The notes: generated from the sequence alone by a model not told the origin. A DNA stretch of 64,000 bases from Dicyema japonicum (GCA_011109175.1 RDEW01000064.1:136653-200652), one strand, 5' to 3'. Shown: positions 1 through 60,230, counted from the stretch's first letter. Numbers and translations are program-made.

Positions 1-2125
1 TGGCGATGAGTACTTTTCTGTCAACAACTCTTCCCAACATAGTGGCTCCCTTACAGTCTCATTTTCATTGAGGTCAGCTTCCATCACTTCAGGATCGTCC
101 TCACTGTTGTCCGCTTCCTCTTCTTCGTCCGACTTTGGAGACAATTCAGACTCATCTAATCTTCAGTCACCCATTTCAGCTTGCAGTCGGCGAAGTATAT
201 GATTTATCTGTGCAGCATTTTCAGTCGTACTCTTCTTTAGGAGATCATTGAGCCTCTTCTCCATCTCCTATAAACTAATAATCCATCATCTAACGATTTT
301 ACTCCCAGCCTTCCGGATTCTTTGGTCAGAGAGAAGCGTATATAGGGTTCCGTGTATGTAAGGTTTGATCTGCATATTTAGCTCAGTCAACCTCAGAGTT
401 GGGACTTTCCAGTAATCTCAGAAGCACAGACAGGTATTTCTGAGCGTAGGAAACACAGACCTGTCGTCCAGAGTTTAAGATACAAAGATTCATTAGCAGA
501 GCTAGTCCATACTCCAAGGAATAGTCCGAGAGACTCTCTGAATCTTCCAACCGATCCATGATCCACTGAATGAGATTCAATTTGATCATTTCTGTTTGAA
601 ATTGCCGACTGACAGCTCACACTGAAATCTACCGCAGTGTCAGTTTTTGGATGGCTCCCACCAACTGCTGCCTAGTTGGACTGTCTCCGGGTTCTTTTTT
701 CATAGCGGATATCATCGATTCCAACAAACTTGGAGAAAGAGTTATTTACTCCCGTCCACGTGCCAGTGAGCCCAATGAGTTAATTAAACGTGCAAGATTG
801 TCCAATATGACCTCACTGGAGACACTGAGTGATTCGATGATCGTTTTCTGTCTATCAAATGGAAAGGTACCCCATATTGGTGTAATTTACTGCACCCGAA
901 GATGTCGTTCGATATAAAACTCTGCAGAACCTCTTTCCTGGTACGTCTATCTGATCTTATCAGTCCCCAACGAAGAGCTTGAAGGAGAGGGGGTGTCTTT
1001 TTTTCATCCCCTTCAGCGATCTTCTGGCGAACCTTTTCGAAGTTTAATTTAATAAAGGCGACGATGTTCTTCGGTCTCATGTATATCCCCAGCTACCTTA
1101 CCTTGGTAATATAGCGGGTTTATTAGGTTGTTCCGTGCGATTTGGTCGTAAAGAGGCCCTCCCAGAGACGATTCTGCCGGTGGTCTGATTGCTGAACATC
1201 CTCTTGGCTATTTCGTCGATATTTTCAGGTGTTAGCTTCTGTAATTATAATTTTTGTACCGACTTTCCGTTCACAGTATCCTCCAAAGCATCGATTAATT
1301 CGCTGGCAATATCGATGAGGTTCCTATAGTCCGACTCTAGACTAGTCATTAGCTTGGCTGCTTGGTCTAGTTTCCTTTCAGTCTCCTTCTTTTGTCGAAC
1401 GACCTCATCCACTTTGTGCTCAGACTCCACATTCATCTATTTCCTAATTACTCCCAGCATAACCAATATGTCATAAAGTTGAGGATTCTTCTGTCCGTAA
1501 ATCTTGCTTATAAATTTCTTCAATTTGCCTATTAGACTCTTCTTCCATTCTTCAGTGAAGATGTTTTTGAAGGCTCGATGAGTGGTAGAGTTTTTGATAC
1601 ACACGAAAGCACAGTACGGAAAGAAGTCGTTCGATTGACTCAGTTCTGAGCCTTCTGTCTCCAAAAACTGCTTAAAACTGTTCATTCGATGAAAGTTCTC
1701 GTCATAATCGAACTGGGAGTTAGAATTTGGTTTACGTCGGTGGTCTCTCGGTAGGTGTAGGTGGCGAAGAATATTTCCAGGTAGAACCTCATCTTATCTT
1801 TTGTTTCCTTGTCGTTCTTGGTGGTCAAATGAGAAAAATGTTGATCCCACAGCAAAATGAATTTGCCACGACCCCCGTTTTTTATGAGGTTTAACAACTT
1901 TGACTAAATTGTTGCTAAAATTTACTTGAATTTCTGATGTGATTATTCTTGATTCTGGCATGGCTCTGTTCGTGCTTTCCTGTTCGAACTCCATCCTGAG
2001 ATCCTCATATCCCATAAATTTCAAATACTGCTTTGTAATTATAATATGACCTCGGTTACTAACTGTCGTGCAAGACGGGGGACATCCGGTCGTCCTTTAT
2101 TAGGATTGGGCAAATAATCAGACAT
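1..2125 (-). CDS. ARMC9: LisH/armadillo ciliary protein ARMC9, runs off the window start; 10 resolved micro-introns (21-27 nt); two in-frame stops (possible pseudogene)
   Basis: The spliced translation is colinear with ARMC9: LVTE|YLKFMGYED (LisH), FYLEIFFA, FKQFLETEGSELSQ, DYRNLIDIASELIDALEDTVNGK, LLQALRW, LARLINSLGSL, GAIQKLTLR|RQFQTEMI, SLSDYSLEYGLALLMNLC, E|IKPYIHGTLY, VMEADL. ATG at 2125. Introns at 2028-2050, 1904-1925, 1713-1735, 1437-1463, 1239-1259, 1076-1101, 848-870, 609-632, 370-391, 268-294. In-frame TAA at 746-748 and TGA at 163-165. Confidence 0.9.
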
Positions 2126-2199
2126 ATTTCGTTGTCATAGATTTTATTATTTTGATTTTTAAATTTATTTATTTATTTGGTGCAATGTGGTTAATTTCT

Positions 2200-2580
2200 A
2201 AAAATTTATCTTCCTTCCCTCTTATGGCGTCATTGGGTCCACCTTACAAAGGATACGCCCAACCGATAATTAGCTACGGCTGTAAGGCATGGGGTACAAA
2301 CCTGTCTTATAGGAACCTAAAGAAAATTAATGTCTTTCAAACAACAGTCACGGGAGTCCTCCTTACGGTTGATGCCAATATTTTTCAAGGAACTTGTGAG
2401 AGGAACGGGAGCCCGATCGCTATCTCCGAAATCCAGTAAAGTTTCCCGTAGGTACAGGAAACATGTTGGTTTCGTGACGAACACCGTTGAAGGATGAGTG
2501 GCATACTAAAAGAGGCCGGGATCACTTGAAGGCCACGTATCTTTTTGACATGTCGGTGATTTTAGGTTTTAAATAAATAA
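2200..2580 (+). mobile_element. 3' remnant of an I/Jockey-group non-LTR retrotransposon with terminal stem-loop
   Basis: RT C-terminal motif QPIISYGCKAW; reading ends AGIT*; stem GGGATCAC/GTGATTTT (2518-2563), then an AAATAAATAA tail. Confidence 0.55.
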
Positions 2581-2599
2581 TAATTTCGGATGTGGCATA

Positions 2600-5240: not shown

Positions 5241-5241
5241 C

Positions 5242-14640: not shown

Positions 14641-15539
14641 TCTGTCCGTAGAGGCAAGAATGGTATAGTGGCATAGGAGAGGATCAGACAGTTTTAATTA
14701 AAAGTTTATTAACATAAAAATAAAACTGCAATAAATTAGAGAATGCGACGAGAATTGGTAATTGAATTATGATTCACTAAAAACAATTATAAATTATAAA
14801 ACTTAAATACACTTATTTATAGTTTTTTGCATAAATTATCAATATCTCGTCAAATCGTTGACAACGTCACTTGCATTAATATTTTTAAAATTTTACCGTT
14901 TGTTGTATTTCATATTATGCAGCGTAGAAAAACTTGTTTCGCATAAATTTTTCGTTGAAAATTGTAAAATAATAGACAGTCTTTGTGTAGATAATCTGGG
15001 ATATATGTTACTAACATATATTCAGAATTCTCCAATTTTTACTCCAACACTATTGATTTTATGAATCGATCATTAAACAGTTCAATAAGTTCTTCAATCT
15101 CTTCAACAGATAAGTGTTTTGACTCTGACAGAAAGAATGATTATCAAGTTTTCGCCAATGATATTAGGTTTCAGTTATTTTACTATCAATTGCTTTGGTA
15201 TCAATAAAATCACACTTTTAACACATTTGGCACACCTAAAAAATACCATTGTCAAAATCGAACGTGGACAACAGTCGCACATTACACACAAGTGATTCTC
15301 CTCTCTCAAACTAGCGCCCACGAGGAATGACACAAAACGATCATTTGTCTCACAAAAGCTAGTAATAGGTGTCTTCTTTCTTTATACAATCTTCCGGGTG
15401 TTTTCACGTGATCACGGTTAATCACAAAAGCAAGCACAAATGACACAAAATAAATAAAAATAAATCAGAGATTTAAACAAGTCAAGTCCCTGTGCTGTGT
15501 AGCATCAATTAATCTACTAATATCATCCTTAACTGAATA

Positions 15540-16720
15540 AGGGATATCCCAAGCACATTAAGAGTACGCATAAATCTCCTCAACAGCAAATTTATGTTCC
15601 ATACTCTACAATAACAAAAATATTACAATGAGCCAAATCCACGTGTTAACATGGCACACCAGAGTGAAATTATCTTCCACCAGTTTACTCATCACGACAA
15701 AAAATCTCTGCAACACACGATAAGAAGCGGATGGAAGCATAGTCAATGCCACTTGCAAAGCGGAGAGATTCTTAGCCAACAAACAGGCCTTAATGACGCA
15801 CCCACAGGCAGAGGGTATAACCTCCTCAAACACCAGCATTCTATAGTAATTGGCAATAAAGGAGAACATAGTCTCAATCATCTCAAAGCTCAGATTAAGG
15901 ACATCTACAAAATAACCAGTCAATACTACTTTTAATCAACTCCCAATAATTGGCATCCAACAATCGGGGGAGACTGGTGTCACAGTAATCATTGACTCCT
16001 TTAATAACCCCCATTTGTTGGCAATTGTCAATATAATGCATATTGTCCATCATTTTACGTCAATCCACTACCTCTTCTATGATATTCAGAGAATTTGTTA
16101 GTACTTGATCATCACCTCCCTTCAGTTCCTTCCACAGACTACAATGAGTACATAAAGTACAAGTCCACACAAACGTCCCCATATAATAGCTCAATTTGCC
16201 TGGGGGTGAGTACTGCACAGTTAATCTGATTTTTTGTGGGCACGGAGAGTGTCATCATTGAAACTATCAAATCTTCGGTCTGGTTGCTGAGAGTACTGAT
16301 ATTCCTCTCACATCCGAAACTGGAATATATAAAGAATTTCGCCTGTAGAGAGTATCCCCATCTGAAAAGGGAGCACAGTAAGATTTATTGACGGGTACTA
16401 TGATTCCACATTGGAGGTACTTTTCTAGTAGTTTGACCACCTTTGAACTGTGGAATGAGAATTGACTAAACCGAGGGAATCAACGTCTGTAGAATGGACA
16501 CTCGAAAATCATAAAGTGATGGAGATGGTGAACAGCATCATTCCCATTAAAACAGTTTAAATAGATCTTCCATTTGCTCCTGTATATTCTCAGCGGTAGT
16601 GTTGTCTTTAGTTTTGCCACCAATGACAATCACTATGCTTTAATTTATAATAGAAACAATTTTTGTAGCTATTTGACTATTATTTCAATGTCTTGTAAAA
16701 TCCATACGTATAATCGCCGG
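15540..16720 (-). pseudogene. DEPDC1/DEPDC7-like gene (DEP domain plus RhoGAP-like domain) with in-frame stops
   Basis: ATKI|*LSLVAKLKTTLPLRIYRSKWKIYLNCFNGNDAV...VKLLEKYLQCGII...DTLYR (DEP domain; TGA at the W of ATKLW); MFSFIANYY; ALQVALTMLPSASYRVLQRFFVVM (RhoGAP-like). Confidence 0.65.
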
Positions 16721-17399
16721 CAATTTATTTATAATTTAAATTTAATTTTTTAAATATTTTTTTAATAATTTTATTTAATATTAATTTGTCAATCTATTTT
16801 TTTTAAACTTAGAACTTATTCCTTGGTGGCTAATTCGTACAGGGATTTTAGGGATTTGCCTAGCGCCAGTTCGTAAACAGCCATAGGTTCGGTAAGGAAA
16901 GAGAAGTATTTCTTTAGAGCAGTGGTTCCCAAATAGAAAGGCCGTAGATAACCTTCGACCAGGAAGAATTGAACTCACGGATAATTGGTTTTATGTATTT
17001 TTAAAATCATTTGTGCTTTTTTGTGAACTGTCCCTTCATTATAAAGTTTTTTAGTTCTGTCCATTTAACAACCCCCCTATTGACGGATTATTTAAAACAG
17101 TCGATATTGAAAATCAATTATTTTTGAAAAAATGAATGCCTAAATTAACTTTATATAAGTGAAGCCTCTGACACGTGATCATACAATTTTGGCCGGACTG
17201 ATTTGAACACAGATACTTTGCAATTTCACACTCTTTGTTGAGTTCATAAATTTTGGTTTCTGATGTCTCTCATATTCGCCACCTCGTCTTGCAGACTTGT
17301 GCCTGCAGCAGCGGGTTACGAGAGATGAACAGTTTTAAAGAATCTCGAAGGGAATAGTTTTCAAAGTAGACGACTACATCTAAAATTCAAAATTAGCAA

Positions 17400-17590
17400 A
17401 ACAGGAAGTTTTTTAAAGAATTTGTGAAAAAACCGGAATCCTAATGACATTTCCGAAATTCTCAAAAGCATCTCGTACATACAGGAAGTGCATTGGTTTC
17501 CGGGACGAGCAGAGAGCATAGATGGGGCCGGGATCATTGAGGGCCATGTATTTCCTTTTAATTTGTTGGTGATTTTTCGTTCAAATAAAT
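17400..17590 (+). mobile_element. LINE 3' tip with stem-loop
   Basis: Homologous to 2460-2580; stem GGGATCATT/GGTGATTTT (17530-17576), tail AAATAAATAAA. Confidence 0.45.
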
Positions 17591-19574
17591 AAACTGATTA
17601 GAATCTTTATCATAGGTATTGCCGACAACAATGGTCTTACTGAGCGTTTTGAAAAAAAATTTTCGTTTCAAAGTTGAGTCGCGTCGTAAGACGATCCTGA
17701 CTTTGTTAGCGACACCTTTACGCATTCTCTCGTACGCTCTAGAAATTTCGGAACCGATTGTGATGAAACAGAAGCGATCTCCGAGGGCGAGAGTTTCTTC
17801 AACATCTACCTTTAATAAAACGATTTTTTAATTTCTAAAAAATATAAATTTGTAAGCAATTCTCGTGATAAAGTGCATTCTTTTTTACTATTTGTATTGA
17901 AAGTGCTCTAACATTCATATCTTTTCTCGACTGTTTTTTCCATTACTTTTTGCTATTAACGAAGGATGAGCTTAATCGAAGTGTTCTCTTAAGGTTGCGT
18001 ATTTTTTCCTCTAGCGAATTAGGTTCATCGTGTCACTTAGCCTAAATAATTGAATACTTCTCTTCCTCTAGTAGGAGAAGCTCAATGGCTGGCCAGAATT
18101 CAAAAGGATTCTTTCATCCAAATAGAGACTGTTCACCTTGCTCAGGAGACCCCTAATGCCTGGTTGAATTCAAAAGGATTCTTCTTTTTATCAAACTGGA
18201 GACTATTTCGCTCCCTGGAGACGTGTTCTGGTTTTAACCATATAGCTGAGGCTCAAATGGAACTCGTCAAGAAAAAACTCACTAACTAGGTGATCTCAGC
18301 GTCTAACATTTCACAAACTCTCCATAAATGTTGCACTCGCGACTCAACTGCAATCCGAATCTCGATCTTGTTATAAATTTACATAACTCATAATTTGCCT
18401 TTAATTATAAAAATATTATAAATTGAATAAATAATATTTTTAGACTGGTTAACCAATTATTATAACACGCGCACATGCAATTAGAATGATTTTCTAGTAG
18501 TGCAGATATATATACTTCTTCCGATTTTTTTGTTATTGATTTCGATCTGGTTGTTATCAAAATGATAAAGATTCAACTATTTCGGTAACTTCAATCAAGC
18601 AGTATTGCTTCAATAACAACAATTCCCCCTTATTTTATTTTTTTCACATGCAGTTCACTATCGAATTATTTTTATACTCCAAGTACAAATTTATTTTTAT
18701 AAAAACAATGTTAACACATCAATGGAAGGAATTCATGAGACCTAATCCATTTTTGTCCCACGTTTTACCCTCGCGGACATCACTTCATTCTTTAGCGGAA
18801 TAGTTTTCATAATGCAATCTTCATCAGAGGATTTGGTCAGGGAGAAATGTAGGAAGATCCTTTTTAACAACTGTGTCGTGCCTGAAGGACTCGTTGTCTC
18901 ACGGGTGGGATCTGTTTGACAAGAATTGACCTTCGCTGAAAACTCTATCTTTCGGATTTGAACCCACGACATTTCCATTTTGAATAATCCCGTACAGGCT
19001 ATTGCTCCATACTTATGTGAGATATCCACCGAATGCTGTTCTTTTATAATCTGTGTGTTCATTCTTTAGATTTTATTTTTTGACCATATGTTGCAATAAA
19101 CATTGGAGGTGGTTTATTAAACGATTCAGAGGCATCTCTTAACCACGTATATTCCGAAGGAGTTAATATTTAACAAATACTTAATGTGCCCTATTACAAT
19201 GATTGTATATATGGATTAATTTCCGACGTATTGACTCATTACATAATATTAATTTCCAATTGAAATACTAAAAACGTCATTTAGCATGGATAAACCAAAT
19301 AATATTGCGTTAAATGTGGAAATAATATTATCTTACTCGGAAATATACAAGTGTCTTCCAATTGATCACTTGCATTAAGACTCATCGTTGTAATTTTATT
19401 ATTTATTTAACCCCAAGACCACCAGGAAACATAGGATTTTAATTTAAATTTTGTTTAATAAATTGTTTTATATTAATTTATTATAGAAAACTAATGTATT
19501 AAAATGCACTATATAAACAATTCATTGAACCATGAATCTCTTATGCATGTGGTATATAGCGCACATTCATCTCT

Positions 19575-19820
19575 TGGACAAATGTCTTGAAGATCGAGGA
19601 TATCCGAAAAAGAGTTCCCAAAATCATGGAACGCTGGATTTCTGGAGAGTTCCAGCCATCAATGCCTCTTGAAGCCTTGATACGAATGAACTATGGAACC
19701 CGCCGTCGTGACTGCGAAGGTCTAGTCACTCGACCGATACGCGCTTGTGTGGGGTCGAGGGAGCATCGAGCCAAGATGCGGTTCCTGCTAGAGCGTGCTG
19801 GGTTCATGTGATTAGTTAGT
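19575..19820 (+). mobile_element. LINE 3' remnant
   Basis: ORF ending RACVGSREHRAKMRFLLERAGFM*, homologous to 2600-2890 and 24450-24580. Confidence 0.55.
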
Positions 19821-20099
19821 AAGATCTAAATCTATGTAATAACGCGGAACGAAGTTCAAGCTGTATTATCACGTTATCCATTCCGAAATAACATGTAATA
19901 ACTATATATTTCCCCCTCTATGCATTTGGGGACAATTGATCAGTAGGCTAGTTGTCCCTTTGCCTTATCAGAATTTCCATTAATAAATTTTGCGACCAAT
20001 CTACCAAAATGTCTTATCCTCCATAAAATTGAATTTTATCAACCAGACATAGAATTCAAATATATTGAACTAGAAAAACATCGTCATAGTCATAATGAA

Positions 20100-23600: not shown

Positions 23601-23799
23601 TCCCGGTCCAAGTTATGTTATCCATTAAATTGAAATCCAATTCTCGGAATGTACAACTGAAGCACTTTTTGAGAAATTTTTTTATTTTAAAACCAAGAAT
23701 CACCGACAAAATAAAATAAGAGAGTGGAGACCGTCAGGTGATCCCGGCCTCCTTATATTAGGAAATAAATGTACATTATTAAAATTAAATAATGCCGTA

Positions 23800-46749: not shown

Positions 46750-47280
46750 TCTTTGGTTGGCTGAGGCGAGTCCGAGAGGCTATAATTCCAGGGATTTCCG
46801 GTTGGAATATTTTCCAAATAAGTTTTTCCTGGGGACGGAGTCAAACGCTTTGTGAATATCCACGGAATAAAGTACCGTCTTCTGGGTGTGTTTGTGACTC
46901 ACCTCAGGATAAAATCTGCCAGGGTGGTTAAATGGGTAGAAGTTGAGAGATCTGTTTTGAACCCGTGCTGAAATGACATATCTGGTAAAACATCCTAAAT
47001 TTTTGAAAGGACTAGATTTTCCAGTAGCTTTGAGATTGAACATAGGAGAGAGACAGGCCTGAATGACGCTTGATTGTCTTTCCATCTTCCAGGTATCAGA
47101 ATTGGTCGTATATGAGCACTTTTCCAAATAGTATAAAATTTTTGTTAACTGAACAGTCTTGTTAGGATGCAATGCCTAGTGTTCCTAGATATTTCAGTAA
47201 AATAGTTGGAATTCTATCAGGACCGCTAGTCTGTTTTAGAGCATTTTAGTCAACCGTAATGGCACATGTGAATAAAATAT
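46750..47280 (-). mobile_element. LINE RT core fragment
   Basis: QHGFKTDLSTSTHL and VDIHKAFDSV (RT motifs 2a-3). Confidence 0.6.
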
Positions 47281-47519
47281 CCTGAATAGTTTGCGGATTT
47301 GTAGGTTTTATTAGTGATGTTATTTTTATTATTTTGTTTTTGTTTTTTAAATTCAATAACTTTTTGCTAGTGATTGAGGATGCTTGCATTGCGTGTGTAA
47401 TAATAAATGGGATTGAATAATCGCTTCCTTAGAATAGTCAACACCCCAATGCAAACATAGATGCTTAGTGGAACATTTCATAATTTAAAAAATCACTAAA
47501 TAAAAAATCTCCCTAAGGG

Positions 47520-50203
47520 GGAATCGCCTCCTTTGAGAACACTGTCCTAGTAGATGATAACTGGACACAATATATTCTTTGTTACTGATCCCTCTTAGAA
47601 ATACCCTTAACACGTGGTCGAATACACCCTATTCACCACCGACATTAAAATCTCCCGGTAGTGCGACAGCAGACTCTACAGTACCAGTCGGTTAAAGAAG
47701 GCGTCAATTTCTAAGGTAACTGAGGGACCAACCTTTCCGACGGTGCTCTAAAATAAATTAACTACTTACTCTGAAGACTCTTAATAGACTCAATCAGCAG
47801 TCCGTGCTCTCCCACAGAATTACAGATGTGTACAACCTCTGACTGCAATTGAGCTGCAACTTTCTGACATTATCCCTTACTCTACCATTATCTCATTAAA
47901 CTGATCCAGCACGTGGGCAAAAACCTTTTCCATCAAGTATTCCATGCCACGTAACCCCATCACCAAACACAATGTCTCCATCTCTACCATTACCACACTC
48001 CAACCTTGTCGTGATGTGTATTCCTCCAAGTCGAACACGTGAGCACCCTCATTTGCACACAACCCCACGAAACAGTTACAGGAGAACGAGTATATCACTT
48101 CCCTCCGAGCCTACGCTTTCAGCAGAAAGTCAACGTACCTAAGTAACCACCACGTAACTACCACGCAGCCATTCTCTGCTGTAGAGGCGGTAGGTCCCCA
48201 ATCTCAGTACAGTTCACCCACAGCCCATTATTAAGTGAGTCCATAACACGTGTCCAGCCAACTAAGAATAAAAGAACCCCTTACAGACAGCATCCACTTG
48301 CACAACCACATTAATGAGGACGGATATCCTCAAGTTCACTTGTGAGGGAAGACACGTGATCATTGCAGCACTGCTTTGATACGAGCTTTCCTCTATCATT
48401 CTTAAGAGGATGGCACTGAGAGCGCTCTCAAACTGCTTTCTGTGATGTTCCGTCGCGAATCTACGGAAAATCCTTGACAGGGCTGTAATAGACGTCATAA
48501 GGTTGGACCTACTGTGACCATAATAACCCACGTGGTCTAAAAATACTCTTTATTGTTAGTTAAAGATATCTCAGACTTGCTTTTCGACTGCTTCCCGGAT
48601 ATGTGACCCATCATTCTCTGTCCCAACACTGCGAGATCCAAAGCCTTTATCAACCCACGAGTCACCTGTTTGTNCTTAAGAGGATGGCACTGAGAGCGCT
48701 CTCAAACTGCTTTCTGTGATGTTCCGTCGCGAATCTACGGAAAGTCCTTGACAGGGCTGTAATAGACGTCATAAGGTTGGACCTACTGTGACCATAATAA
48801 CCCACGTGGTCTCAAAATACTCTTTATTGTTAGTTAAAGATATCTCAGACTTGCTTTTCGACTGCTTCCCGGATATGTGACCCATCATTCTCTGTCCCAA
48901 CACTGCGAGATCCAAAGCCTTTATCAACCCACGAGTCACCTGTTTGTAAACTTCAGCTTAATGTAGTAGACGTTCTCGATATGCTGAATCAAGGAGAAAA
49001 CCACGTTCTCCAGAAATTTATCACAGAGACTTTCTGCTATGCTTATCAATGGAAATTTCTTGTGTTACCACCAGCTACCTCCTCAGGACAAAGCACGTGG
49101 AAGCAGGTTCCTACTCCCTCTGTAAGTCGAAGGTAGCTACCAATGTAGTTGATTCTGCTTATTCTGGAGAGACACAGGGAGAAGTGGTGCTCTATCAGGT
49201 TGGAGGTGTGGCTAAATCACGGAAAAGGCTTACAAATATTTGGAGAGGTCACAGACACGTGCCAGAAATTCGGGGTATGCGTTAACAGCCATGTTTATGG
49301 AGGAAAGGTCTGACAGGAGAGCTGGTACAGGGATCCCCTTTAAGGTGCAAATCCCCTGAGCCATAGACAAAACATACTCGCAGTCATCTACATGTCCCTC
49401 ACGGAATGCCGTCTCCAGTCGTACGCAGATGTCCAGTCCACATGGAGTTGACAAAGTCTGGACCTTTCCGAGCAAATATTCCAAATGTGCTTTGGCCTGA
49501 CCCATCAGTTCGGTTTTTCTAATCAAGCACGTGTCATGTAGTTGTCCCACCATGTGCACTAGGGCAATAACAGACTTGTCGTCCAACTCTCCCTCAAATT
49601 TAATCTTTTTACCCGCCACTGAGCATATTAAGCCCCAAAATGAGTCTTATTTCGTCCGCTGATACAACAGGATCTTAGTCATGGAAGGTAACTACAACAC
49701 ATGTAACCAGTACCTCACTGTAAATATTGTTGGACAGCTGGGCATTCACCTCCTCCATCATACCCGAAAGGACTGTCTTTCTCTTCCTTATCAAAGTCAA
49801 ACTGGAGATCAGTCACAACAATACTAGTTGGTGGGGAAATTCAGGGATTTGAACTCTGTGGAGAGCATTTGACGCAGTTGTCTAAATATAAAAGAGAACC
49901 AACAATATGATGGCAGCAAAACATCGAACACAGAGATCTTGGGAAAACCTGACCTTGTCCCGGAAAAGACAGACTAGAGGGAATGCTCTGACTGCGTTAA
50001 TGAGGATTGAAGACAGAGATTCGTCCGTTAGTTCCGGCTATTCCGATGAGGGACACTTAGAATAAGGAAATTTTTCACTGATAATCAGTTTAGAGAGGCT
50101 GAAGGGGGCAAACCGTTGAACTCCGTCTAAATCTGAGACCGCTTGATCACCCAGGGAATGGATCGAAGTGAGAAGTGTCAATTTTAAGGAAATTCATTTT
50201 CAT
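47520..50203 (-). pseudogene. NCKAP1: NCKAP1/Nap1/HEM-family gene (WAVE complex) with micro-introns, in-frame stops and apparent frameshifts; part duplicated across N48674
   Basis: KLTLL...ISEKFP (N-terminus), LFRDKV, CFHVLCPEE|...SLCDKFLE, FDLEEYTSRQ|EMETLCLVMGLRGMEYLMEKVFAHVLDQF, against NCKAP1 [39 protein letters not shown]. Introns of 20-23 nt, e.g. 47984-48004. TAG at 50038-50040 and 48537-48539. Confidence 0.75.
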
Positions 50204-51511
50204 GTTCTTTTCGGTTGAAATCACACAATTGCGGATCGCCTGACCAAAGAAGAAGACCTCCTTCCGGATTTTGCAGAAGGGGGCGTCGACCTCGTTCAGG
50301 AAATTCTCAGTTATTCACAGGGTTTATGACGTTTGTAATATTCCAGTGGTTTGGTATCTGAGAAGAGTGACCATGAATTGTTCTTTACAAACAAGAAAAA
50401 GAAGAAGGTGGTCGTGAAAGACAAATTACACCCTCTTAAGCGGCCTCTTAGATGTTTGGCAGCCCTGGAGAACAAATCTCTGGTGAATATAGATGGCAAC
50501 AATAAGGAGACCAAAATGCCTAAATCCAACAAGAAGAAGTCGACGATAGTCTCCAAGACAGATATCACTGAGCTAAACAAAATTCTTCCTGAGAGAAAGC
50601 CTAAACCAAACATGGCAAAGATTTTCGATATTTGGTCTTCCCAAGGCCACAATGACAAAACACGTGTCCACGAAAAACCTGATCTTCTTAAGCAGGTACA
50701 AACGTGTTTTCACGTGTAGAATTTACCACATCCGGGATTTTCCTACAACCCTGAGCCAGAACTCCACCAGGATTTACTCTGGGCTGCCCACGTGGCTATA
50801 AAGAATGATGAGGATGAGAAGGATTTGGCTCAAAAGATTTATAATGAGGGGTTTAACATACCAAAGGAATTACTAGAGGTTATTACCCACGTGGGTTATC
50901 CATTTAGAAGCGGGAGGAAGAGATGATGTTGAGTGGGCTGGGAGAGGACGAGACAGTTCCCAAGGAGACTGAGATGGTAGTAGAAGACGTCATACGGAAG
51001 TCCTTTCGACGGGAGAAGAAGACACGGTCTCAAATTATCGCAAAGAAGCGAAATTTGATGAAGGTCTCGGTCCCTGGTTAATTTTCGGAAAGAATGAGAC
51101 TCCGTGAGTGTCTCAACTCGAAAAGGGACAAACAGTTCCGGAATTTGAATGATATCTGTAAGATGTTGGACAACGAGGATAAAAGGATTGGGGAAAATAA
51201 GGAGCTGACATCAAAGAAGCGAGCTGCTCTTAAATCGAGGACTAAGAGGTTGGCGAGGCTTAAATTCCGTGAACCCCTTCCGTTGGATGTTAAACCGAGT
51301 GATGAACTGCCATCATAATTGACTAAACTGTCGGTAACTGATGATTATTATTACAGCCTGAGGAGAGTCTGTTGAAAGACCATTGCGTGGACTTTCAGAA
51401 GAGGAATCTGATATGTCCGTCGAGGAAGTTAAGGAAGATTGGGTTATTGTTTGTAGTCGTAAGAAGACTAAGTATAGAGAAGTTGTTAGAAGGAGTTTGA
51501 GATATTTGTGA
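50202..51511 (+). CDS. NOP53: Ribosome biogenesis factor NOP53/GLTSCR2; start uncertain; in-frame TAA at 51316-51318
   Basis: GGLVSEKSDHELFF, LKRPLRCLAALENKS, IFDIWSS, PHPGFSYNPEPELHQDLL, KRLARLKF...DVKPSDELPS*LTKLS|PEESLLKD...FQKRNLI; introns of 23-29 nt, e.g. 50696-50719. Confidence 0.85.
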
Positions 51512-52539
51512 GTTTTTAATACTTTGTGTTGAGTTGGCTGTTTTTGTAAATGCTAAGTTGTTAAATAGGCATTTCTTCTTGAAAATGTTTTGAGAATGGG
51601 AAAGTTATGCTTTATAATTAATCTTGCCCCCCATATACAATAAGTCCTCTCTAATCAGTCATCCAGTGCCAAAATACTTTTTCTAACTAGCTTATTTTTG
51701 ACATTATCGGAAAGTTCCTGAATTCGTCGATAAACCGTATTATTGACAATGAAACAAAATCCAGTTTTTTAGCGATTTCTCCCTTAAAGACACTCCACGA
51801 GCTACTGGCTTATTTTTGATATTATCGGAAAGTTCCTTAATTCGTCGATAAACCGTATTATTGACAATGAAACAAAATCCAGTTTTTTAGCGATTTCTCC
51901 CTTAAAGACACTCCACGAGCTTTCTAAAATTTATACGCTTAACCATTGTTCGCTATCAGATAACTCACATAATAAAATAACTTTAAAATTAAAAAGATGG
52001 TCTGGTCCATTTTAGATGATTGTCTAGCAAAATTTAGTAGAGATGATTTACATTTTGGACTTGTTGAATTTATTTTGAAAAATAACCATTGTTCGCTATC
52101 AGATAACTCACATAATAAAATAACTTTAAAATTAAAAAGATGGTCTGGTCCATTTTAGATTATTGTCTAGCAAAATTTAGTAGAGATGATTTACATTTTG
52201 GACTTGTTGAATTTATTTTGAAAAAAAATCCTTATTTTTGAGACGTGGATGCTTCATTGACAAATGTTTCGAAAGCTTTGATGGTGTTTGTCATTATTTG
52301 ATTGCATATTCATTTTGCCGTTTCCGGTATATCTTCCTTTTTCAAATTCATATTATAGATAACATTATTTTATTTGCTTTTTATTAATAATAATAAATAA
52401 GGCGATTTTTGTCAATAAAGTCAAAAATTCATATGTCCTTTAAAATTATTTAAAACTTATAAAAATGTGATTTTAAATAAAAAAATATTCTATAAATCAA
52501 AAGTTATAAAGTCAAAAAAAAGTCAAAATATAACTTTTT

Positions 52540-52950
52540 TTGCCGAACGATCCATCGAGGCATGTGACTGAAATGATATCTTCGACATGCTGAGGTCTGA
52601 GGCCAAACAGCATCGTCTTGCATGCCATGTGTTCGCCGCCAACCATGGGTGCGGAGCGTGGCAGGATGCACTCCCGTGTTCCTCCCTGGGGACCCTTTTG
52701 GACGATGACTGTATTCGGATTGGGATCACCCCTGGGAGTTGATGTTTGCGTCGAACACCAATGTTGATGTGGAGGGATCGTCGATGCCAAAAGGCTGCAC
52801 CCGCTCTCGTGCAAAAGGAGTGCGAGCAGAGCACCCCGCCAAGAAAGATGTGCGGGAAGCGGTCTGGCTGAGGCAACGAATAAATATCGCAGTTGTCCGC
52901 GGAAACGCTTACTCATGATGTCAGCAGCCGCTCTCCCCCATAGTTAATAA
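52540..52950 (+). mobile_element. CRE-like 3' fragment with an internal deletion
   Basis: Near-identical to 62600-63200 but lacks the segment between GCACCCCGCC and AAGAAAGA. Confidence 0.7.
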
Positions 52951-53899
52951 ATAATATTTTATTGTTAATAGATTTTTCGTTTAGTAAAGTAAAAAATTTT
53001 ATCGATTTTATTTATTAATTTTTCGAGTTTTTAAATAAATTGCATAGTGCTGGTAAAAAAAACCGGTTTCGTAGTTACAAACTTTTTTGGCGTATAGATA
53101 TTAATTTTTAACTGAATTAAAGTGTTTGGAGTTGACTAGATGTATAATTTTTTTATTTAAAAAAATTTCCTTAATCGTCTAAAATTTTTAAAATTTCAAT
53201 TTAGCGTGTGAATAAAAAAACCGGATTTGGATTACAGCCAAAGGTAGACTGATTCCAGAACCAAGGCCACAGTGTCGGTTTTCCGAGAGAAAAAATAATA
53301 CGGTAGTTCCCAAAGGGTCCGTCAACGCCCGAAGGCACCTTCGTTTCTTGTAGACAACAAATCCGATTTTGTATCTCTTTAGGTCTTTTCCAGCCTTTTA
53401 GATTGACAGGATGACAGGTTTACATGAAAAAATAAAGTTCTTTACTCCTTGGAATATTTTCCTTCAATACTCATAGGCATCTTTATTGCTAGGGAATCAG
53501 CCAATCTAATCACATGATCATGGCTGATGGCCTTCGAGGGATCACAGTGAGTGAAAGAGTTATTATGCGATCTTTCAAGAGGGCACTAATACATAAAGTC
53601 AGATATACAATTAGTCAATATCTTCCCCACCCCCCACATTTGGCCTCAATTGGTCTGGATCATCTGGGGATTTCAACGAACCTGTCTTCAGCAATAAGTG
53701 ATAACGACCCCACAATGATTTAAATCACTGGTAGACTCATATTTTCTGTGGTTATCGTCGCAATTTTCGTCTCCCATGGACAGTTAATATAAACATCACA
53801 TCTCTCTAGGTCCTTAAAGTATCTCCCTCCACCTGGTCTCTAATACACCTCAAGCATTAAATGTTAGGAGCTTCAGACGAGAAACGAGGGACACTACCT

Positions 53900-54950
53900 C
53901 GTCAAAAAAGGATGACAAACCACTAAGGTGCCTGAAAATATTCATAGATACTCTTCCTGGCGATGGGAGTTTTTGTCCTCGACCACCTGAGAGAACCCCC
54001 TCCCCCTGCAAGAAGCGGTCCACTATGCTAAGTTAAGCATCAATGGGTTGAGGCAAAATTTTGGACTACGCTTTCTCCTGGTGGAGTTGAAGATCGACAT
54101 TGCTTCGATTTACAACTCCCTTTAAACGGACCTACTCCCGCTGTTACCTGTTGCATGTAAATATTGACTAACCGGACAAAAAACAAGGTGGTGGTCACCT
54201 CACTTTATACCGGAGAGATTTTAGATGCGTGGACATCACTTTGGAGACGTAGAACCTAATTGGGAAAGACGATGTACTGAAATCACTGCGATTTCACTTG
54301 GGAAATAAATAGAAATTTTTTTTTATGAACATCTGGGTTCCCCCACCTGATTTTTATCCAAAGCATTGTGCTACACTCGATTTATCCACCTACCTTGAAC
54401 GGTGTGATCAGTAGTTTGAGTTTGATATGTGGATTTTGTAATCCCTAACTGCATGCACGTATAACGCTTCCTGAGATTCTTAATAGCCATCTGAGGCTGA
54501 CGGGGAAGCACGAGGAACGACTAAGACCATGGTGATCTAAAAAATCTTGAACATGGGAGAGAGATAGGTAACCAGGATCATCGACACTACTTTGATTTAT
54601 ATTAGCTACCAAATCAACAAGCCTTTCAGTAGAGTTCGACTGACCAGTGTTGTCGCTCGTGTCGCGATTATCTGGGGGTTCGATCCCTACGTGATACTTA
54701 CCTAGTCGAAGGGTTCCGTTCTCTGCCTTCTTCTAATTAAAGATACCTCATGTGGTATCTCTACCTATCTCAGATGACGGTGTCTGTCGGCATCCAAAAA
54801 GAATATATCTTTTCCCTAATCAACTGGTGGGAAGTAATGCTTGGAAGGATGTGTCTCACTCTGACCGTGGGAACTGGGGTTATTGAATGAAGTAGAGTTT
54901 GACTACTAAAAACTCCTCGTTGTACTTTCCACTTATATTCGAATATGGAA
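53900..54950 (+). mobile_element. Degenerate LINE APE-endonuclease region
   Basis: KQGGG.LTL and NIWVPP-like motifs; many stops. Confidence 0.3.
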
Positions 54951-55449
54951 CTCAACGTTGATCAATAAACTGTTTTGCACGGGCACTGCTATCGACACCC
55001 TTACAATTTCCACCTATAAGGCTGTTTGATAATATGGCCTAGTAATATAGTTGTTTTGTGAGAAAACGACTTTTTTTTAATTTAACTAAGTTAAAAAAAG
55101 AAAAAAATCTTTTCAGCTAACTATGCGATCCTAGACTGATTGGGGGAGGTCAACCGGCGGGACTGGGATCTTTAAATAATTTCCATAACAGGCTTTAAGT
55201 CAGCTCGTATTTTGGGTGGTTTATGAGATATTGGAAAAGGATGTAATAGAGGGGGGTGTTTGCTAGGTTAGGAACTGCTCGGTAAAAGAACTAACCTATT
55301 GTAAATTCTAACTATCTAGTGTTTCCCCCAAAACTGCTTTTCTCAGAAGACGAGCTATAGCCTTGCCACTTCTCCGTTTCCTCTTCGCTCAGATCAATCA
55401 CCACAGCACTACTAAACTGTGACGTTAGCCTACATTATGTATCCCGCAG

Positions 55450-56650
55450 AGTCTTCTAAAATGCATGTATCCCTGTCTTTGATCTTCGGTTAGCGTCGTC
55501 ACAATGTCCTTGATAGCTGAATTCCCTAAACATCCACGTGAATGATGTACCAACTAGATGTCTGCTCAAATTGGATATCTTCATGCAGTGTTTCTCAACC
55601 TGTTTTTGTATCGCCTCTGTCCCATCAAAAATTGTCAATTATTTCGTCTTCTTTTTCAGAATTTATCATTTCATCTTCATCAATGAATTATTCTTTCTCA
55701 GAATTCTCCGATAACACCATTTAGTAGTATCTTCATTTTCATGGTGTTGAATATCAAGGAATGTTTCCATGTCCGGAGGGTCCAAAATTCCAATTTTCCT
55801 AAAAATTTCAGTAATATTATTTCCCCAATCATTTGGACTGACCTCGATATTTTGTTTACGCAATTTATTGAAACAATTTTTAGTTGCTTCATCCATGTTC
55901 TATTTGAGTGATCATAATTTATCGAACATTCATAATTATATTTTTTGTACCTTAAATTTTGAAATCATAACTGGCTTTAATTTATGGGTTCCAGTCATAT
56001 TTGTACATAACATAATTGAAACCCGATCTTTGAAATTTTTATATCCACCAAATCGTGATTTGCATATGCTCTTGGACAAAATCCTAGAGCCCTGTCTCGT
56101 CCATATTGTAAATTTCGTCTTCTTTATAATGTTTGGAAATTTTTTTCAAAGTGATCTACAAATCCTTCTAGGTCAGGTTGTTTGTCAGTTATCAATTCCC
56201 ATCTAATTTATGCATTCGAAAACTGTATTTTAAGAAAACCTTTTGAATTCTTGAAATCACAAATTGATAACTTTTTAGCAATATTTTGTGCTTTATTTGA
56301 TATTGGTCCATCATTTAACATAGCCCCTAACAAACAAATAAAAAAATACTCTTAGATTCCATCAAATCCATCCATTCAACTAGCTTAGCATCAAGTTCAG
56401 GAAATTTTAATGATTTGCATGGCTTTTTTGAAGGAATATAATTTTTAGATGTTTTCAATTTGGAATCTCAGGAATTAATAAAATTATTCACTGTTTTTCT
56501 TTAAATTCGACATTAAATAAATCAGAAAATCTGTGACCGATTGTTTGGCACAATGTAGTATTATTCTCATCTTTATCTCTAAAAATTTCAAGTTTTTGGA
56601 AACAATTAAGCTTGTATAATTACAACGAGAAGCTTTCGAACACATGGTAA
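55450..56650 (-). mobile_element. Tigger/jerky-like transposase remnant
   Basis: Degenerate CENP-B HTH (AS..W.D.F-like) and DDE_1-like peptides; heavily frameshifted. Confidence 0.4.
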
Positions 56651-56964
56651 AATTTTTAAAAAAATAATTGAAAATGATTAGTAAAAATAAATTTTATTTT
56701 TTTTAATAATGTTGGCCAATTTCTTAGAAAAATTTGCTTTTCTATGAAAATTTGCCCTGACGTGAAATTTTGAACCAATTTGAGAATTGGGCAATTAGAG
56801 GGAGTTACTGTAGTTATGAATCCTTAATAACTACCACCGAAAAGCCAACTTTATAAAACCTCTAGTCGTCCATACTAACTTAATGATTATCTAAGAGGAC
56901 ACCTCTGTGCCATTTACTACTCAAAAACCCAAATATTAAAAATGATAAAAAAGAATAAAAAACG

Positions 56965-59900
56965 TTATATAAGATCAGTAAGCGCAATCCTAGGGACGAT
57001 ATTCATAGCAGTCAATTCCTGTATGAGTAATTTAAAAGCATAAGGGATCTTAATAGCAGCCATGGACTGTCCATCTCTACAGTTTTGACACCAATTCTCA
57101 TATCCCATTACTCCACACATTTGACAAATATGAGCAACAAACTCATCACTAGAGTGCACCAATCTCTCATAAATAAGACTGCTGGCCCCGTAAGCTATCA
57201 AACAATCTCTCTCCATTTCCCCAATTCTGAGTCCCCCTTCACGGGTTCTAACCTCCGTGGGTTGTCTAGTCAGATTAACAATAGGTCCAGTCGCCCTAGC
57301 ATGTATTTTGTCCCCCACCATGTGTTTCAATCTCTGATAGTAAACAATCCCATTATAAATATAACACTTTAACGGTAGACTATAATAACACCACAAATAA
57401 CCCCCCAATACCAGTGTACATGATATCCTCCCCAATGTAATTAAATCCATGAGTTTCTAATACCTTCTGAGTAAATTCCCTCTTATGCCCCGTGAAGACT
57501 ACGATAAGTTAGAGAAATACTAGTGGCATCGATGAAATCTCCGTTAATCGATGCCGCCTTCCCCGCCAATATTTCCAAAAGTTTACCCACAGTCATCCTT
57601 GAGGGGAAACCATGGGGATTCATGATCTAATATCCACCAAAAATTACAATATCAGGGATGTAGCCCTACAGTTACGTATTTCATCCAATCCATGACCTAC
57701 CATCAGTCCCAATACCACCTTAGTCTTGACCAGTGGTTTTTGGGGATATAATAAATTATAAATAACAGAGTCGTAACGGTCCCGATGATTCTCAGCCATT
57801 AGGCCCTGAGTCTGTTTGCACATTGCACACTGATAGGTTAGTCTGGGGGCAGGGTTGTGATTAGGGAATGGAATGGTAGAGGCAGCTATACCGATTAACG
57901 CACAACCAGCGATCTCCATGTGAGTATGATGTCTGACTAATTAATACAGCCATACTCAGTAAGCTCATCCCTATTACGGGCCAACACCACATCCTCCATT
58001 TCGTTGCCGTCAATAAACTCCAAAATCCCTTTCTTTGTCATGGTTTGCACTTGTCTACAATATATACCCAACAAACATGTATTTCCTCTGTAAAGCAATC
58101 TCCATTTCGGGGGTAACCAAACATCTCCCATTCTTTACTCTAAAGAAAGGTCTTATTAGGCGACCAGAATCATATGACACTATCACAAAACGACGTATTT
58201 CGTCCATATTAATGTTAACATAAAAGGGGAGGAGTGACAATCGACGTAGTCTTCTTATTCTCTCCACCAAATTAGCAGGTTCAGGAGTTATTCCAATAAA
58301 TTCCCCCAAATTAATAACAAAAGTACCATTAAGGAAAACCATATAGCTTGTAATACTAATAGCCTGAGGTCCCGATAACGATTCATCTACAAGCACTCCA
58401 AAGTTTCTCAATACGGTGGCTATAGCATCATGCTCAATATCACACGACACTTCAGTCAGGAGAGCAAAGTTCTTAACAAGTCCACAACTCTGTAATATAC
58501 AAATGAGGTAACCTCTCCCTCAGGGGTATCACATGGACATATGAAATAAAATTGAGTCCCGTGAATAGATCGGGGACCAACTGCCTTCCTAGACTTCTCA
58601 TATTGGGAGGCTATTCTCGTCAGATGCGTGAGTGTTGCGATATAACAACATCGATTCAACACTTGAGTAACCCCCGGTCTGTCCATTTTGAACATTTTTA
58701 TAACCCAATTCCCCTATAAATCACAACCCCCACTACAGTCAAAATAGCGCCCTCCATTCTGTCACAAATAAATCTGGGGGACATATAGTTAACCAAGTCA
58801 AATCCATTATTCTTGTATAACCTCTCATACCTCTTCCTCAACTAGGAATAACCCCCACTAACAAAATCAGTATTGAAAGTCTGAAACAAATCCTGAAATA
58901 ACAAGGAAAGCAATGAAGAAGCCAACTCCACCCGTTTGTTTCCACAATGTTCCTTACAGTCAACGGTCTCGGGCATTAGCTTACCCTTTATGAACCGGTA
59001 GAACATAATACACAAGTACACCGCCTTTCTCCTCAAATTGAGCCCATCACCCTGATAATAACACAGCAAATGACCTTAATGTGAGGCAGTACTGTGTCGG
59101 AAAGTACTCTATCAACCATATCACTTCTACTTAAGTCCTGAACCCCCTGTTCATAACCGCTTATACTCAATTTATCCTCCAAATACTTACGCGCCTACAA
59201 TTACCCCCAACAGCCACCGCCACAGCCGTGTGTACTTTAGCCACTTCATGACACTGATAGAGACTTGAAGTCAACATTGAGAAAGCCTCAGTTGTGAGTC
59301 CCATGTAGCCAATCGCTTCCTGATCTGTTTCAATGCCGAGGGCCTTCACGACAATGTACGCTGGGACAATCTCACAGAACGAGTTGTGTTTTATGTAAAA
59401 TATGTCGTTCTTGAGGAATAAAGTCAATTTACTCTTCCTTAGGGGGGTAGAACTACAGTTAACAGTGTAACTACCACATAACTGAACATTTCAGCTCTTC
59501 TCCGTCGTCCTCCACTATTATACGGTTTTTTATTGTCTGTTCCTGTATCATGAGTACTCGTTCGGTTCCCTTCACGACAAAGTATCCCCCAGGATCAAGT
59601 GGACATTCCTGGATGGCGATCATCTGATAATCCCTGTGAAGATCGTTCCTGATTATGTTGCAGCATTTGGACTGCAGCATTATTGGCATTCTACATGACA
59701 CCATAGGGTACCGGCCAATCAGGACCTTCTCTTTCTGTACATATGACCCGAGTGCTCCCTTCTGGTAGACAATATCAACGTAAATATCAGCAGAATATGA
59801 CATATTCCTTTGACGGCACTAAAGTGACCCACGTCAACAACTTCATTCGGATAAATATCCCGCATAGCTCCTAATCCGTCTGATACTTCAGGGTGACCAA

Positions 59901-60230
59901 CATAGATATCCTTATATCTGAGAATGATATCACAAATTACTCTATAAACAAGCTTCCTGTGGCAAATGAGTAAAATTGATTCTGTGCCCTCACAATCTCT
60001 TTAATCTAATAATAATGGAAGTAACAACGTGTTTTTGAACGAAACTGTTGAACGAATTAATTTGCATCTTCACTAGTCCACCAAAGTGAAGATATTGAGG
60101 AAGAAAGGACTCCGTACCCTACAATTTATATCAAACTAAGACTTTAAACTCTCTTAAGTGTGATCGATCATTTAAATACAACTCTGAAAATCTTTGGTTA
60201 CTATTGCGTAAATAATAACAATTACTGCAT
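56965..60230 (-). CDS. POLR3B: RNA polymerase III second-largest subunit RPC2 with 18 canonical micro-introns (21-25 nt); lacks about 195 codons of the hybrid-binding region
   Basis: [14 protein letters not shown]|[53 protein letters not shown] (RPC2-type), CPCDTPEGE|[20 protein letters not shown]|[52 protein letters not shown]...[20 protein letters not shown] at 60230, TAA at 56965-56967. Confidence 0.95.

What the first reader, a model, noticed from the sequence alone, without database searches (positions are those of the whole stretch)
1..60230. Gene graveyard: nearly every recognisable host gene, including essential ones, is broken
Seen in the sequence: ARMC9 has 2 in-frame stops. DEPDC1-like has TGA at a conserved Trp. 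The C-type lectin has a frameshift after the signal peptide. NCKAP1 has stops and frameshifts. NOP53 has TAA at the conserved Ser of ELxxSL, and its third intron has no frame-preserving AG. RPC2 has a large internal deletion, a GT..GG intron and substitutions at normally invariant residues (EGR>EVR, AMGKQ>AMCKQ, RNTY>RLTY). Established knowledge: RPC2 and NOP53 are essential, so intact copies must exist elsewhere. Inference: this TE-dense block may be a decaying duplicate territory, such as a non-recombining second haplotype, germline-restricted or eliminated DNA, or somatically amplified copies. DNA elimination and differential amplification have been reported in dicyemids. Only the HtrL-like gene looks intact.
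Basis: partly seen in the sequence, partly recalled or inferred. Interest (0 to 1): 0.75.

Follow-up and report, generated by a model that had tools for sequence, protein, structure and literature searches.

The report
Dead duplicate genes in repeat-rich scaffold
Most of the "broken" genes in this stretch of the octopus parasite Dicyema japonicum are decaying spare copies made by large local DNA duplications. Better copies lie elsewhere, mostly on the same scaffold. Two of the genes called broken (ARMC9 and the lectin) were misread because of 21-27-base introns and an assembly artefact.

Summary
The window is C339:136653-200652 of the 67.5 Mb, 377-scaffold Dicyema japonicum assembly.

**Confirmed broken**
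- RPC2: a 585-bp deletion removes the core of domain 6, and Gly is replaced by Val in the E-G-R motif.
- NOP53: one TAA and one lost splice acceptor.
- NCKAP1: a fragment cut at both ends.
- DEPDC1-like: two TGA codons.

**Not confirmed**
- The lectin "frameshift" is a 22-nt intron. The gene reads open for 149 codons.
- One ARMC9 "stop" lies in a 21-nt intron. ARMC9 is single-copy and open except for one TGA near its tail.
- The A-M-C-K-Q and R-L-T-Y changes are shared with the better RPC2 copy. RPA2 also carries the Cys, so these are lineage traits.

**Cause**
- About 64% of the window has another copy on the same 248-kb scaffold.
- Window 50.5-62.2 kb (NOP53 and RPC2) duplicates C339:213-239 kb at 97% identity.
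- Window 27-50.3 kb is collinear with C339:11.7-63.2 kb.
- The better NOP53 and RPC2 copies lie 26-40 kb downstream.

**Context and open points**
- Dead duplicates occur elsewhere in this genome. I found an RPB2 pair, and earlier reports of this scan list DMC1, XMAP215, NDUFS1 and RFX. No special territory is needed, and germline restriction was not testable.
- The better RPC2 copy itself carries a TAA in the assembly, probably from mis-phased patches.
- The flanks of the gap at 29087-29423 are overlapping copies of one unit (95.7% identical), so the sequence is not continuous there.

The parts
1..2125 (-). ARMC9 gene, single-copy, 11 introns of 21-27 nt. Its last 128 bases run off the window start.
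   Evidence: Pfam ARMC9_ARM and CTLH_Armc9 match its exons. It is the only locus in the genome. The splice-path model needs 11 introns and 1 lesion (cost 17.3), against 32-76 in 20 shuffles. No other copy of 1-3364 exists on C339.
165..167 (-). In-frame TGA in the ARMC9 tail, the only unresolved stop in this gene
   Evidence: Only a 15-nt GT..AG could remove it. Ninety-five codons stay open behind it.
729..749 (-).
   Evidence: It is GT..AG, frame-preserving and of typical length.
15270..16929 (-). DEPDC1-like gene copy with two nonsense codons (16480-16482 and 16060-16062)
   Evidence: It is 90% identical to C135:88.8-90.5k, which is open at both sites. The DEP match is weak (on the C135 copy only, 27.9 bits).
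16806..24797 (.). Duplicated block, copy of C339:80422-93444 (92-96% identity)
28692..29976 (-). Second, partial DEPDC1-like copy, interrupted by the assembly gap 29087-29423. The two flanks overlap each other.
31500..34700 (+). Retroelement with reverse transcriptase
   Evidence: RVT_1 at 33687-34361, E 4e-13
36178..36417 (+). 241-bp tandem repeat of the lectin 5' end, next to the single N at 36418. Probably a gap-closing artefact. In this unit the intron acceptor reads GG.
   Evidence: It is absent from the paralogue at C339:36985-37400.
36448..36967 (+). C-type lectin gene, an open 149-codon frame with introns of 22, 27 and 21 nt. The last conserved Cys is Ser here (the paralogue keeps Cys).
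47210..50302 (-). NCKAP1 pseudogene fragment, truncated at both ends, with a tandem repeat of about 270 bp at the single N 48674
   Evidence: It is 86.9% identical to C79 and 93.3% to C339:60.3-63.8k.
50300..50480 (.). Junction of two duplicated blocks, 26 bp upstream of the putative NOP53 start
   Evidence: Homology to C339:63178 ends at 50299. Homology to C339:212959 starts at 50481, where the other copy runs into an N gap.
50326..51511 (+). NOP53 copy A. It has a dead third-intron acceptor (51064-51087) and a TAA at 51316-51318.
   Evidence: Pfam Nop53 E 5e-19. Copy B reads open for 299 codons with 5 canonical introns from the gap edge onward.
56967..60118 (-). RPC2 copy A. It has a 585-bp deletion at 57674|57675, Gly>Val at 57251 and Arg>Met at 58694.
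50481..62174 (.). Segmental duplicate (block A) of C339:212959-239204 (block B), same orientation, 97.0% identity over 10.2 kb aligned
61085..62225 (+). Reverse-transcriptase fragment. Block A ends inside it at 62174.
   Evidence: RVT_1 at 61721-61978. Boundary seen.
63391..63999 (+). HtrL_YibB-like ORF, one of at least 3 copies on C339
   Evidence: Pfam PF09612 E 1.3e-8. Copies found.

Best explanation
Window 16-62 kb is a patchwork of DNA-level segmental duplications and transposon remains inside one 248-kb repeat-rich scaffold of Dicyema japonicum.

Two large duplications abut at 50.3-50.5 kb. The left one is collinear with C339:11.7-63.2 kb. The right one copies C339:213-239 kb.

The copies keep their introns and flanking DNA, so they were made from chromosomal DNA and not from mRNA. 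In each pair the window holds the more degraded member, which has decayed as a redundant spare: deletion, nonsense, splice-site loss, truncation.

Shown: the duplications, the lesions, and the retained introns.

Inferred:
- Copy B of RPC2 and NOP53 is the working gene.
- The five damaging differences private to RPC2-B come from short mis-phased patches between two 97-100% identical copies in a merged short-read and long-read assembly.

ARMC9 at the left edge is an ordinary single-copy gene and not part of this process.
For: - Coverage: 63.5% of the window has another copy on C339, and 52% at 85% identity or more over 300 bp or more.
- Block map.
- A/B identity is 97.0% over 10.2 kb. It is higher in RPC2 exons (98-100%) than in intergenic parts (90-97%).
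- Introns are kept in both copies.
- RPC2: there are only two RPC2-type loci in the genome, both on C339. The other RPB2-family loci are RPA2 (C112) and two RPB2 copies.
- Lesions private to the window copy: the 585-bp deletion, Gly>Val and Arg>Met in RPC2, and two lesions in NOP53.
- The window NCKAP1 copy is truncated at both ends.
- The DEPDC1-like gene belongs to a family of at least 8 loci, and the window copy has 2 nonsense codons.
- The same kind of event occurs outside the scaffold. RPB2 on C24 and C35 are 90.4% identical with 23 gap openings, and the C35 copy is frameshifted. Earlier reports of this scan describe dead duplicates of DMC1, XMAP215, NDUFS1 and RFX.
- The assembly history fits local artefacts: Platanus plus Falcon merged, then SSPACE, GapCloser and HaploMerger, with 48.9% repeats (PMC6736024).
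- The five B-private damaging RPC2 differences fall in 2 runs of neighbouring sites among 38 differences, P about 0.0045.
Against: - No copy of RPC2 is clean in the assembly. Copy B has a TAA at C339:233757-233759.
- The 5' end of NOP53-B is hidden in a 3.7-kb N gap.
- Each of the three NCKAP1 copies has a private candidate lesion.
- A hand count for RPC2 gives about 13 synonymous and about 13 non-synonymous differences, a ratio near 0.3. That is lower than expected if copy A had long been neutral, so its death is recent or gene conversion is at work.
- No reads or transcripts could be consulted. The protein database held no dicyemid sequence.
- The polarity of the first RPC2-B patch rests on weak evidence: profile spacing and my recollection of human POLR3B.
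Confidence: 0.7

Rival explanations
1. Assembly artefact. Blocks A and B are two haplotypes, or population variants from pooled animals, of one locus that the scaffolder placed in tandem. The 'pseudogenes' would then be null alleles or consensus errors.
For: - DNA came from pooled specimens, and the assembly passed through merging, GapCloser and HaploMerger.
- Block B starts at a 3.7-kb gap and holds a 2.2-kb gap.
- Single Ns mark false tandem repeats.
- The gap flanks at 29 kb are overlapping copies that differ by 4.3%.
- About 900 bp of RPC2 (window 59175-60074) is 100% identical between A and B.
Against: - Mean A/B divergence is 3%, and up to 9% locally, against a published heterozygosity of 1.24%.
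- B carries extra stretches of about 12 kb and 2.8 kb, and A carries a 585-bp deletion.
- NCKAP1 has three copies and the DEPDC1-like family eight or more, which two haplotypes cannot give.
- A haplotype null for both RPC2 and NOP53 would be hard to keep in an animal that also self-fertilises (from general knowledge of dicyemid biology).
Confidence: 0.15
2. The block is part of DNA treated differently in germline and soma: germline-restricted, eliminated, or selectively amplified. Duplicated genes would decay there because they are not expressed in most cells.
For: Chromatin elimination, extrachromosomal circles and selective amplification have been reported in dicyemids (Noto et al. 2003 and Awata et al. 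2006, as cited in PMC6543705). The window holds the more degraded member of every duplicate pair.
Against: - Nothing in the sequence marks elimination.
- The same scaffold carries the best copies of RPC2 and NOP53 and the unique ARMC9 gene.
- Similar dead duplicates lie on large ordinary scaffolds (C35, and the cases).
- No depth data were available.
Confidence: 0.07
3. The window genes are functional, and the lesions are reading errors caused by micro-introns or base-calling errors.
For: This proved true for the lectin and for one of the two ARMC9 stops. Splice signals are reduced in this species (PMC13644364).
Against: - The 585-bp RPC2 deletion removes about 195 codons of the catalytic domain and runs from mid-exon into an intron.
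- The NOP53 third intron has no usable acceptor, and the paralogue shows the intact state.
- NCKAP1 lacks both ends.
Confidence: 0.05

Closest known systems
Unprocessed (duplicated) pseudogenes in segmental-duplication-rich regions, as in human pericentromeric and subtelomeric DNA
   Same: The copies are made at the DNA level with introns and flanks. Blocks from several sources are juxtaposed as a mosaic. One member of each pair decays. There are signs of gene conversion or homogenised stretches.
   Different: The introns are 21-29 nt, so lesions are easy to confuse with introns. The partners lie within one 248-kb scaffold. The chromosomal position (centromere or telomere) is unknown.
Other dead duplicates in the same Dicyema japonicum assembly
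   Same: These are intron-retaining, truncated or frameshifted spare copies of otherwise conserved genes, with a better copy elsewhere.
   Different: Here several such copies, including two essential genes, are packed into about 15 kb. The better RPC2 copy is itself not clean in the assembly.
Germline-restricted or programmed-eliminated DNA (lamprey, songbird germline-restricted chromosome, Ascaris; chromatin elimination reported in dicyemids)
   Same: Such DNA is rich in repeats and in duplicated copies of ordinary genes.
   Different: The defining property, a soma/germline difference in presence, was not testable. Nothing seen here requires it.

Membership tests
Unprocessed pseudogene from segmental duplication | A paralogous copy exists, and the introns are retained in the copy | tested here: met
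   RPC2 and NOP53 introns are present at the same places in A and B. The NCKAP1 and DEPDC1-like copies align through introns.
Unprocessed pseudogene from segmental duplication | Flanking non-coding DNA is co-duplicated | tested here: met
   The 11.7-kb block 50481-62174 includes intergenic DNA and a retroelement fragment.
Unprocessed pseudogene from segmental duplication | Disabling lesions are private to the copy | tested here: met
   RPC2 deletion, NOP53 nonsense and acceptor loss, NCKAP1 truncations, DEPDC1-like nonsense codons.
Unprocessed pseudogene from segmental duplication | Relaxed selection (non-synonymous to synonymous ratio near 1 on the dead lineage) | tested here: inconclusive
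   The hand count for RPC2 A against B gives about 13 synonymous and 13 non-synonymous differences, a ratio near 0.3. There is no outgroup to separate the lineages. Gene conversion is possible.
Processed (retroposed) pseudogene | Introns are absent, with a poly-A tail and target-site duplication | tested here: not met
   Introns are retained throughout. No poly-A is seen at the block ends.
Uncollapsed haplotype (false duplication) | Divergence is close to genome heterozygosity, and the copies are collinear without large indels | tested here: not met
   Mean divergence is 3.0%, and up to 9% locally, against 1.24% heterozygosity. There are indels of 12 kb, 2.8 kb and 585 bp.
Uncollapsed haplotype (false duplication) | Each copy shows half read depth | not testable with these tools
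   No reads were available.
Germline-restricted or eliminated DNA | Presence or depth differs between germline and somatic DNA | not testable with these tools
   No reads or stage-specific libraries were available. There are literature reports only.

The most novel reading that the evidence does not exclude
The dead-copy block, or the whole C339 scaffold, belongs to DNA that dicyemids eliminate, circularise or amplify differentially during somatic development. If so, the apparent lack of any clean RPC2 or NCKAP1 copy in a whole-animal assembly would reflect a mixture of germline and rearranged somatic versions of these loci, and not assembly error.
Probability: 0.06. Interest if true: 0.8.

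Novelty: new member of a known kind. Interest (0 to 1): 0.3.

Why it matters
- **Annotation.** Micro-introns of 21-29 nt make intact genes look broken, and they let broken genes be rescued by spurious splice paths. Duplicate-aware comparison is needed to tell the two apart.
- **Assembly errors flagged.** The reference assembly has false tandem repeats at single Ns, overlapping gap flanks, and a stop codon in the only RPC2 copy that has a catalytic core.
- **Gene loss in a reduced parasite.** Several apparent losses of essential or conserved genes in this genome are dead spare copies, not true losses.
- **Repeat content.** The region is one worked example of how segmental duplications and transposon remains fill a stretch of this 67.5 Mb genome, which holds only about 5,000 genes and is about half repeats.

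Tried and rejected
1. **Splice-path dynamic programme.** With any GT..AG of 18-60 nt, or NAG acceptors up to 45 nt, it finds lesion-free paths even in shuffled sequence. I therefore rejected it as a test of integrity. It is useful only with lengths of 19-31 nt and a shuffle control, and even then it cannot say which NCKAP1 copy is intact.
2. **Transcript or independent-assembly evidence.** The word-based protein search with the RPC2 C-terminal exon found no dicyemid sequence. The best hit was 71% identical, from an octopus.
3. **DEP domain search in the window.** There was no hit at E up to 0.1. Pfam scans of 30 other ORF pieces found only reverse transcriptase and a transposase-type DNA-binding domain. 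I located the DEPDC1-like gene by eye and confirmed it through paralogues.
5. I redid the step with coordinates only.
6. **PDB search with the 40-aa RPC2 exon** that holds the first B patch gave no polymerase match. Polarity there is weakly supported.
7. **Asn/Asp difference at 57545.** I dropped it as uninformative, because human RPC2 has Asp and yeast has Asn.
8. **Spliced (joined) gene models.** I never sent these to a search tool. Exons were searched one by one by reference. Joined translations were made only inside local scripts to check open frames.


Full report
**Identity of the sequence.** The window is G000:C339:136653-200652, in an assembly of 67,542,437 bases in 377 contigs. These figures, and the 21-29-nt introns, match the published Dicyema japonicum genome. 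That genome is 67.5 Mb in 377 scaffolds and 48.9% repeats, with 1.24% heterozygosity. It was built from pooled animals by merging Platanus and Falcon assemblies, followed by SSPACE, GapCloser and HaploMerger (PMC6736024). Very short introns with reduced splice signals are documented for this species (PMC13644364). I fetched the whole 247,640-base scaffold. It holds 8 N gaps of 26 bases or more and 14 single Ns.

**The assembly gap.** Sequence before the gap (28692-29063) and after it (29510-29881) are two overlapping copies of the same unit. They are 95.7% identical, and both match window 15704-16257. The letters on the two sides are therefore not continuous. The gap sits inside a second, partial copy of the DEPDC1-like gene, and it is either a false join of overlapping contig ends or a true tandem repeat. 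No conclusion below depends on it.

**RPC2.**
- Pfam and PDB matches identify the minus-strand gene at 56967-60118 as RPC2. The best PDB hit is human POLR3B.
- The genome has five RPB2-family loci: RPA2 on C112, two RPB2 copies on C24 and C35, and two RPC2 copies, both on C339.
- The second RPC2 copy (B, C339:233384-237116) lies 40 kb downstream in the same orientation.
- Aligning the two copies shows that the window copy (A) lacks 585 bp. The deletion runs from the middle of an exon into the next-but-several intron, leaving a 10-base GT..AG remnant. It is a genomic deletion and not an exon-precise one. It removes profile positions about 59-257 of domain 6.
- A also has Val for the invariant Gly of E-G-R and Met for an Arg conserved in human and yeast RPC2.
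- The 1-bp A/B indels at 59824, 59208, 58856 and 57631 all lie inside 20-23-nt introns and are harmless.
- The substitutions A-M-C-K-Q and R-L-T-Y are shared by A and B. RPA2 has the same Cys. They are lineage features, not marks of decay.

**Copy B of RPC2 is not clean either.** It has a TAA in the most conserved motif of the family and a Pro>Arg 34 bp away. At both sites A keeps the state seen in human RPC2. About 1.7 kb upstream it has a 1-bp deletion, a Val>Gly and a Leu>Pro within 46 bp. For that upstream patch, profile spacing favours the 40-codon reading of copy A, but the evidence is weak. These five differences form two runs of neighbouring sites among the 38 A/B differences, P about 0.0045. 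My reading, which is an inference, is that these are short phase-switch patches between two nearly identical copies, or gene-conversion tracts from the dead copy. Only long reads can decide.

**NOP53.** The genome has two loci, both on C339.
- The window copy (plus strand, 50326-51511) has exactly two lesions relative to copy B. The acceptor of the third intron reads CG instead of AG, which leaves an in-frame stop in the retained intron. A TAA also replaces a Ser codon.
- From the edge of a 3.7-kb N gap onward, copy B is an open 299-codon frame with five canonical introns of 23-29 nt. Its 5' end is unknown because of the gap.

**NCKAP1.** There are three copies: C79:824433-827989, C339:60312-63780, and the window fragment at 47210-50302.
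- The window copy is 86.9% identical to C79 and 93.3% to the other C339 copy.
- It lacks about 580 bp (nearly 200 codons) of the 5' end and about 675 bp with the C-terminal exons. It is a fragment.
- I could not show that either full-length copy is intact. C79 has a TGA where both C339 copies have a Gly codon. The C339:60 kb copy has a 113-bp deletion.
- A CYFIP gene, the partner of NCKAP1, is present.

**DEPDC1-like gene.**
- No DEP domain scores in the window.
- The gene at about 15270-16929 (minus strand) is 90% identical to a paralogue on C135. The DEP domain of that paralogue scores weakly.
- The family has at least eight loci.
- The window copy has TGA at 16480-16482 and 16060-16062, where C135 has Gly codons in long open frames.

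**Genes that are not broken.**
- Lectin (36448-36967): the shift of frame after the signal peptide is a 22-nt intron. With three introns the ORF is open for 149 codons.
- The 241-bp tandem repeat next to the single N at 36418 is absent from the paralogue at C339:36985-37400 and looks like a gap-closing artefact. In that repeat the intron acceptor is mutated.
- The one blemish in the lectin is Ser for the last conserved Cys of the lectin domain.
- ARMC9 is the only copy in the genome and lies in the only long unique stretch of the window.
- A homology-guided manual model and an independent splice-path search give essentially the same ARMC9 structure: 11 introns (nine identical, two resolved slightly differently without effect on the reading frame).
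- One TGA remains at 165-167, beyond the ARM domain, with 95 open codons after it. The model costs 17.3, against 32-76 in 20 shuffles.

**Architecture.**
- 63.5% of the window has another copy on C339.
- Window 27-50.3 kb is collinear with C339:11.7-63.2 kb. Window 16.8-24.8 kb copies C339:80.4-93.4 kb. Window 50.5-62.2 kb copies C339:213-239.2 kb.
- The two large blocks meet at 50300-50480, 26 bp upstream of the putative NOP53 start.
- Block A ends inside a reverse-transcriptase fragment.
- A/B identity is 97.0% overall. It is 98-100% in RPC2 exons and 90-97% in intergenic DNA, and about 900 bp (window 59175-60074) is 100% identical.
- By hand count RPC2 has about 13 synonymous and 13 non-synonymous differences, a ratio near 0.3. 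This suggests that copy A died recently or that the copies exchange sequence.

**Is this a special territory?**
- The same scaffold holds the best copies of RPC2 and NOP53 and the unique ARMC9 gene.
- Outside it, RPB2 is duplicated (C24 and C35, 90.4% identical with 23 gap openings), and the C35 copy is frameshifted.
- Earlier follow-ups of this scan on other pieces of the genome report dead duplicates of DMC1, an XMAP215 paralogue, NDUFS1 and RFX, and a LINE-capped local duplicate. I did not re-test those.
- Dead, intron-retaining duplicates are therefore a general feature of this genome.
- Chromatin elimination and selective amplification have been reported in dicyemids. No tool here can test depth or stage differences, and nothing in the sequence calls for them.

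**Limits.**
- No reads or transcripts were available, and the protein database held no dicyemid sequence.
- Spliced models were searched exon by exon by reference only. The joined step was left out of all database tools.
- Some polarity statements for the upstream RPC2-B patch rest on my recollection of human POLR3B and are marked as inference.

**Verdict.** The region is an ordinary, if dense, case of segmental-duplication pseudogenes in a repeat-rich parasite genome, with useful warnings about the assembly.

Noticed in passing
C339:233757-233759 (outside the window; equivalent to window 57340): The only RPC2 copy with a catalytic core carries a TAA in the assembly, so no clean RPC2 exists in this reference genome. 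Its five private damaging differences sit in two tight patches.
   Followed up: partly
window 57828-57842 and locus L001 (C112): RPC2 (both copies) and RPA2 have Cys where second-largest RNA polymerase subunits normally have Gly in the M-G-K-Q motif. RPB2 on C24 keeps Gly.
   Followed up: partly
loci L002-L011 (C24:580.4-584.7k and C35:803.7-807.9k): RPB2 is duplicated. The two copies are 90.4% identical over 3.1 kb with 23 gap openings, and the C35 copy is frameshifted in a conserved exon.
   Followed up: partly
window 36418 and 48674: Single Ns are flanked by local tandem repeats (241 bp and about 270 bp) that are absent from paralogues. These are probably GapCloser artefacts that can mimic gene damage.
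   Followed up: partly
window 165-167 and 50326-50346: Two places would need GT..AG introns of only 15 and 16 nt to keep a frame (the ARMC9 tail and the NOP53 start). That is shorter than any intron modelled elsewhere in this work (19 nt or more).
   Followed up: no
window 63391-63999; C339:118459-119370; C339:40047-42620: An ORF of the bacterial-type HtrL_YibB family (PF09612) occurs in at least three copies on this animal scaffold.
   Followed up: no
C79:824433-827989; C339:60312-63780; window 47210-50302: Each of the three NCKAP1 copies has its own candidate disabling lesion. Whether the animal keeps a working NCKAP1 is open. A CYFIP locus exists at C334:602.6-604.1k.
   Followed up: partly
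window 7276-8472 (minus strand): A 399-codon open frame has no Pfam match. Part of it is 96.5% identical to C339:204.1-204.5k. It is probably the non-catalytic part of a retroelement.
   Followed up: no
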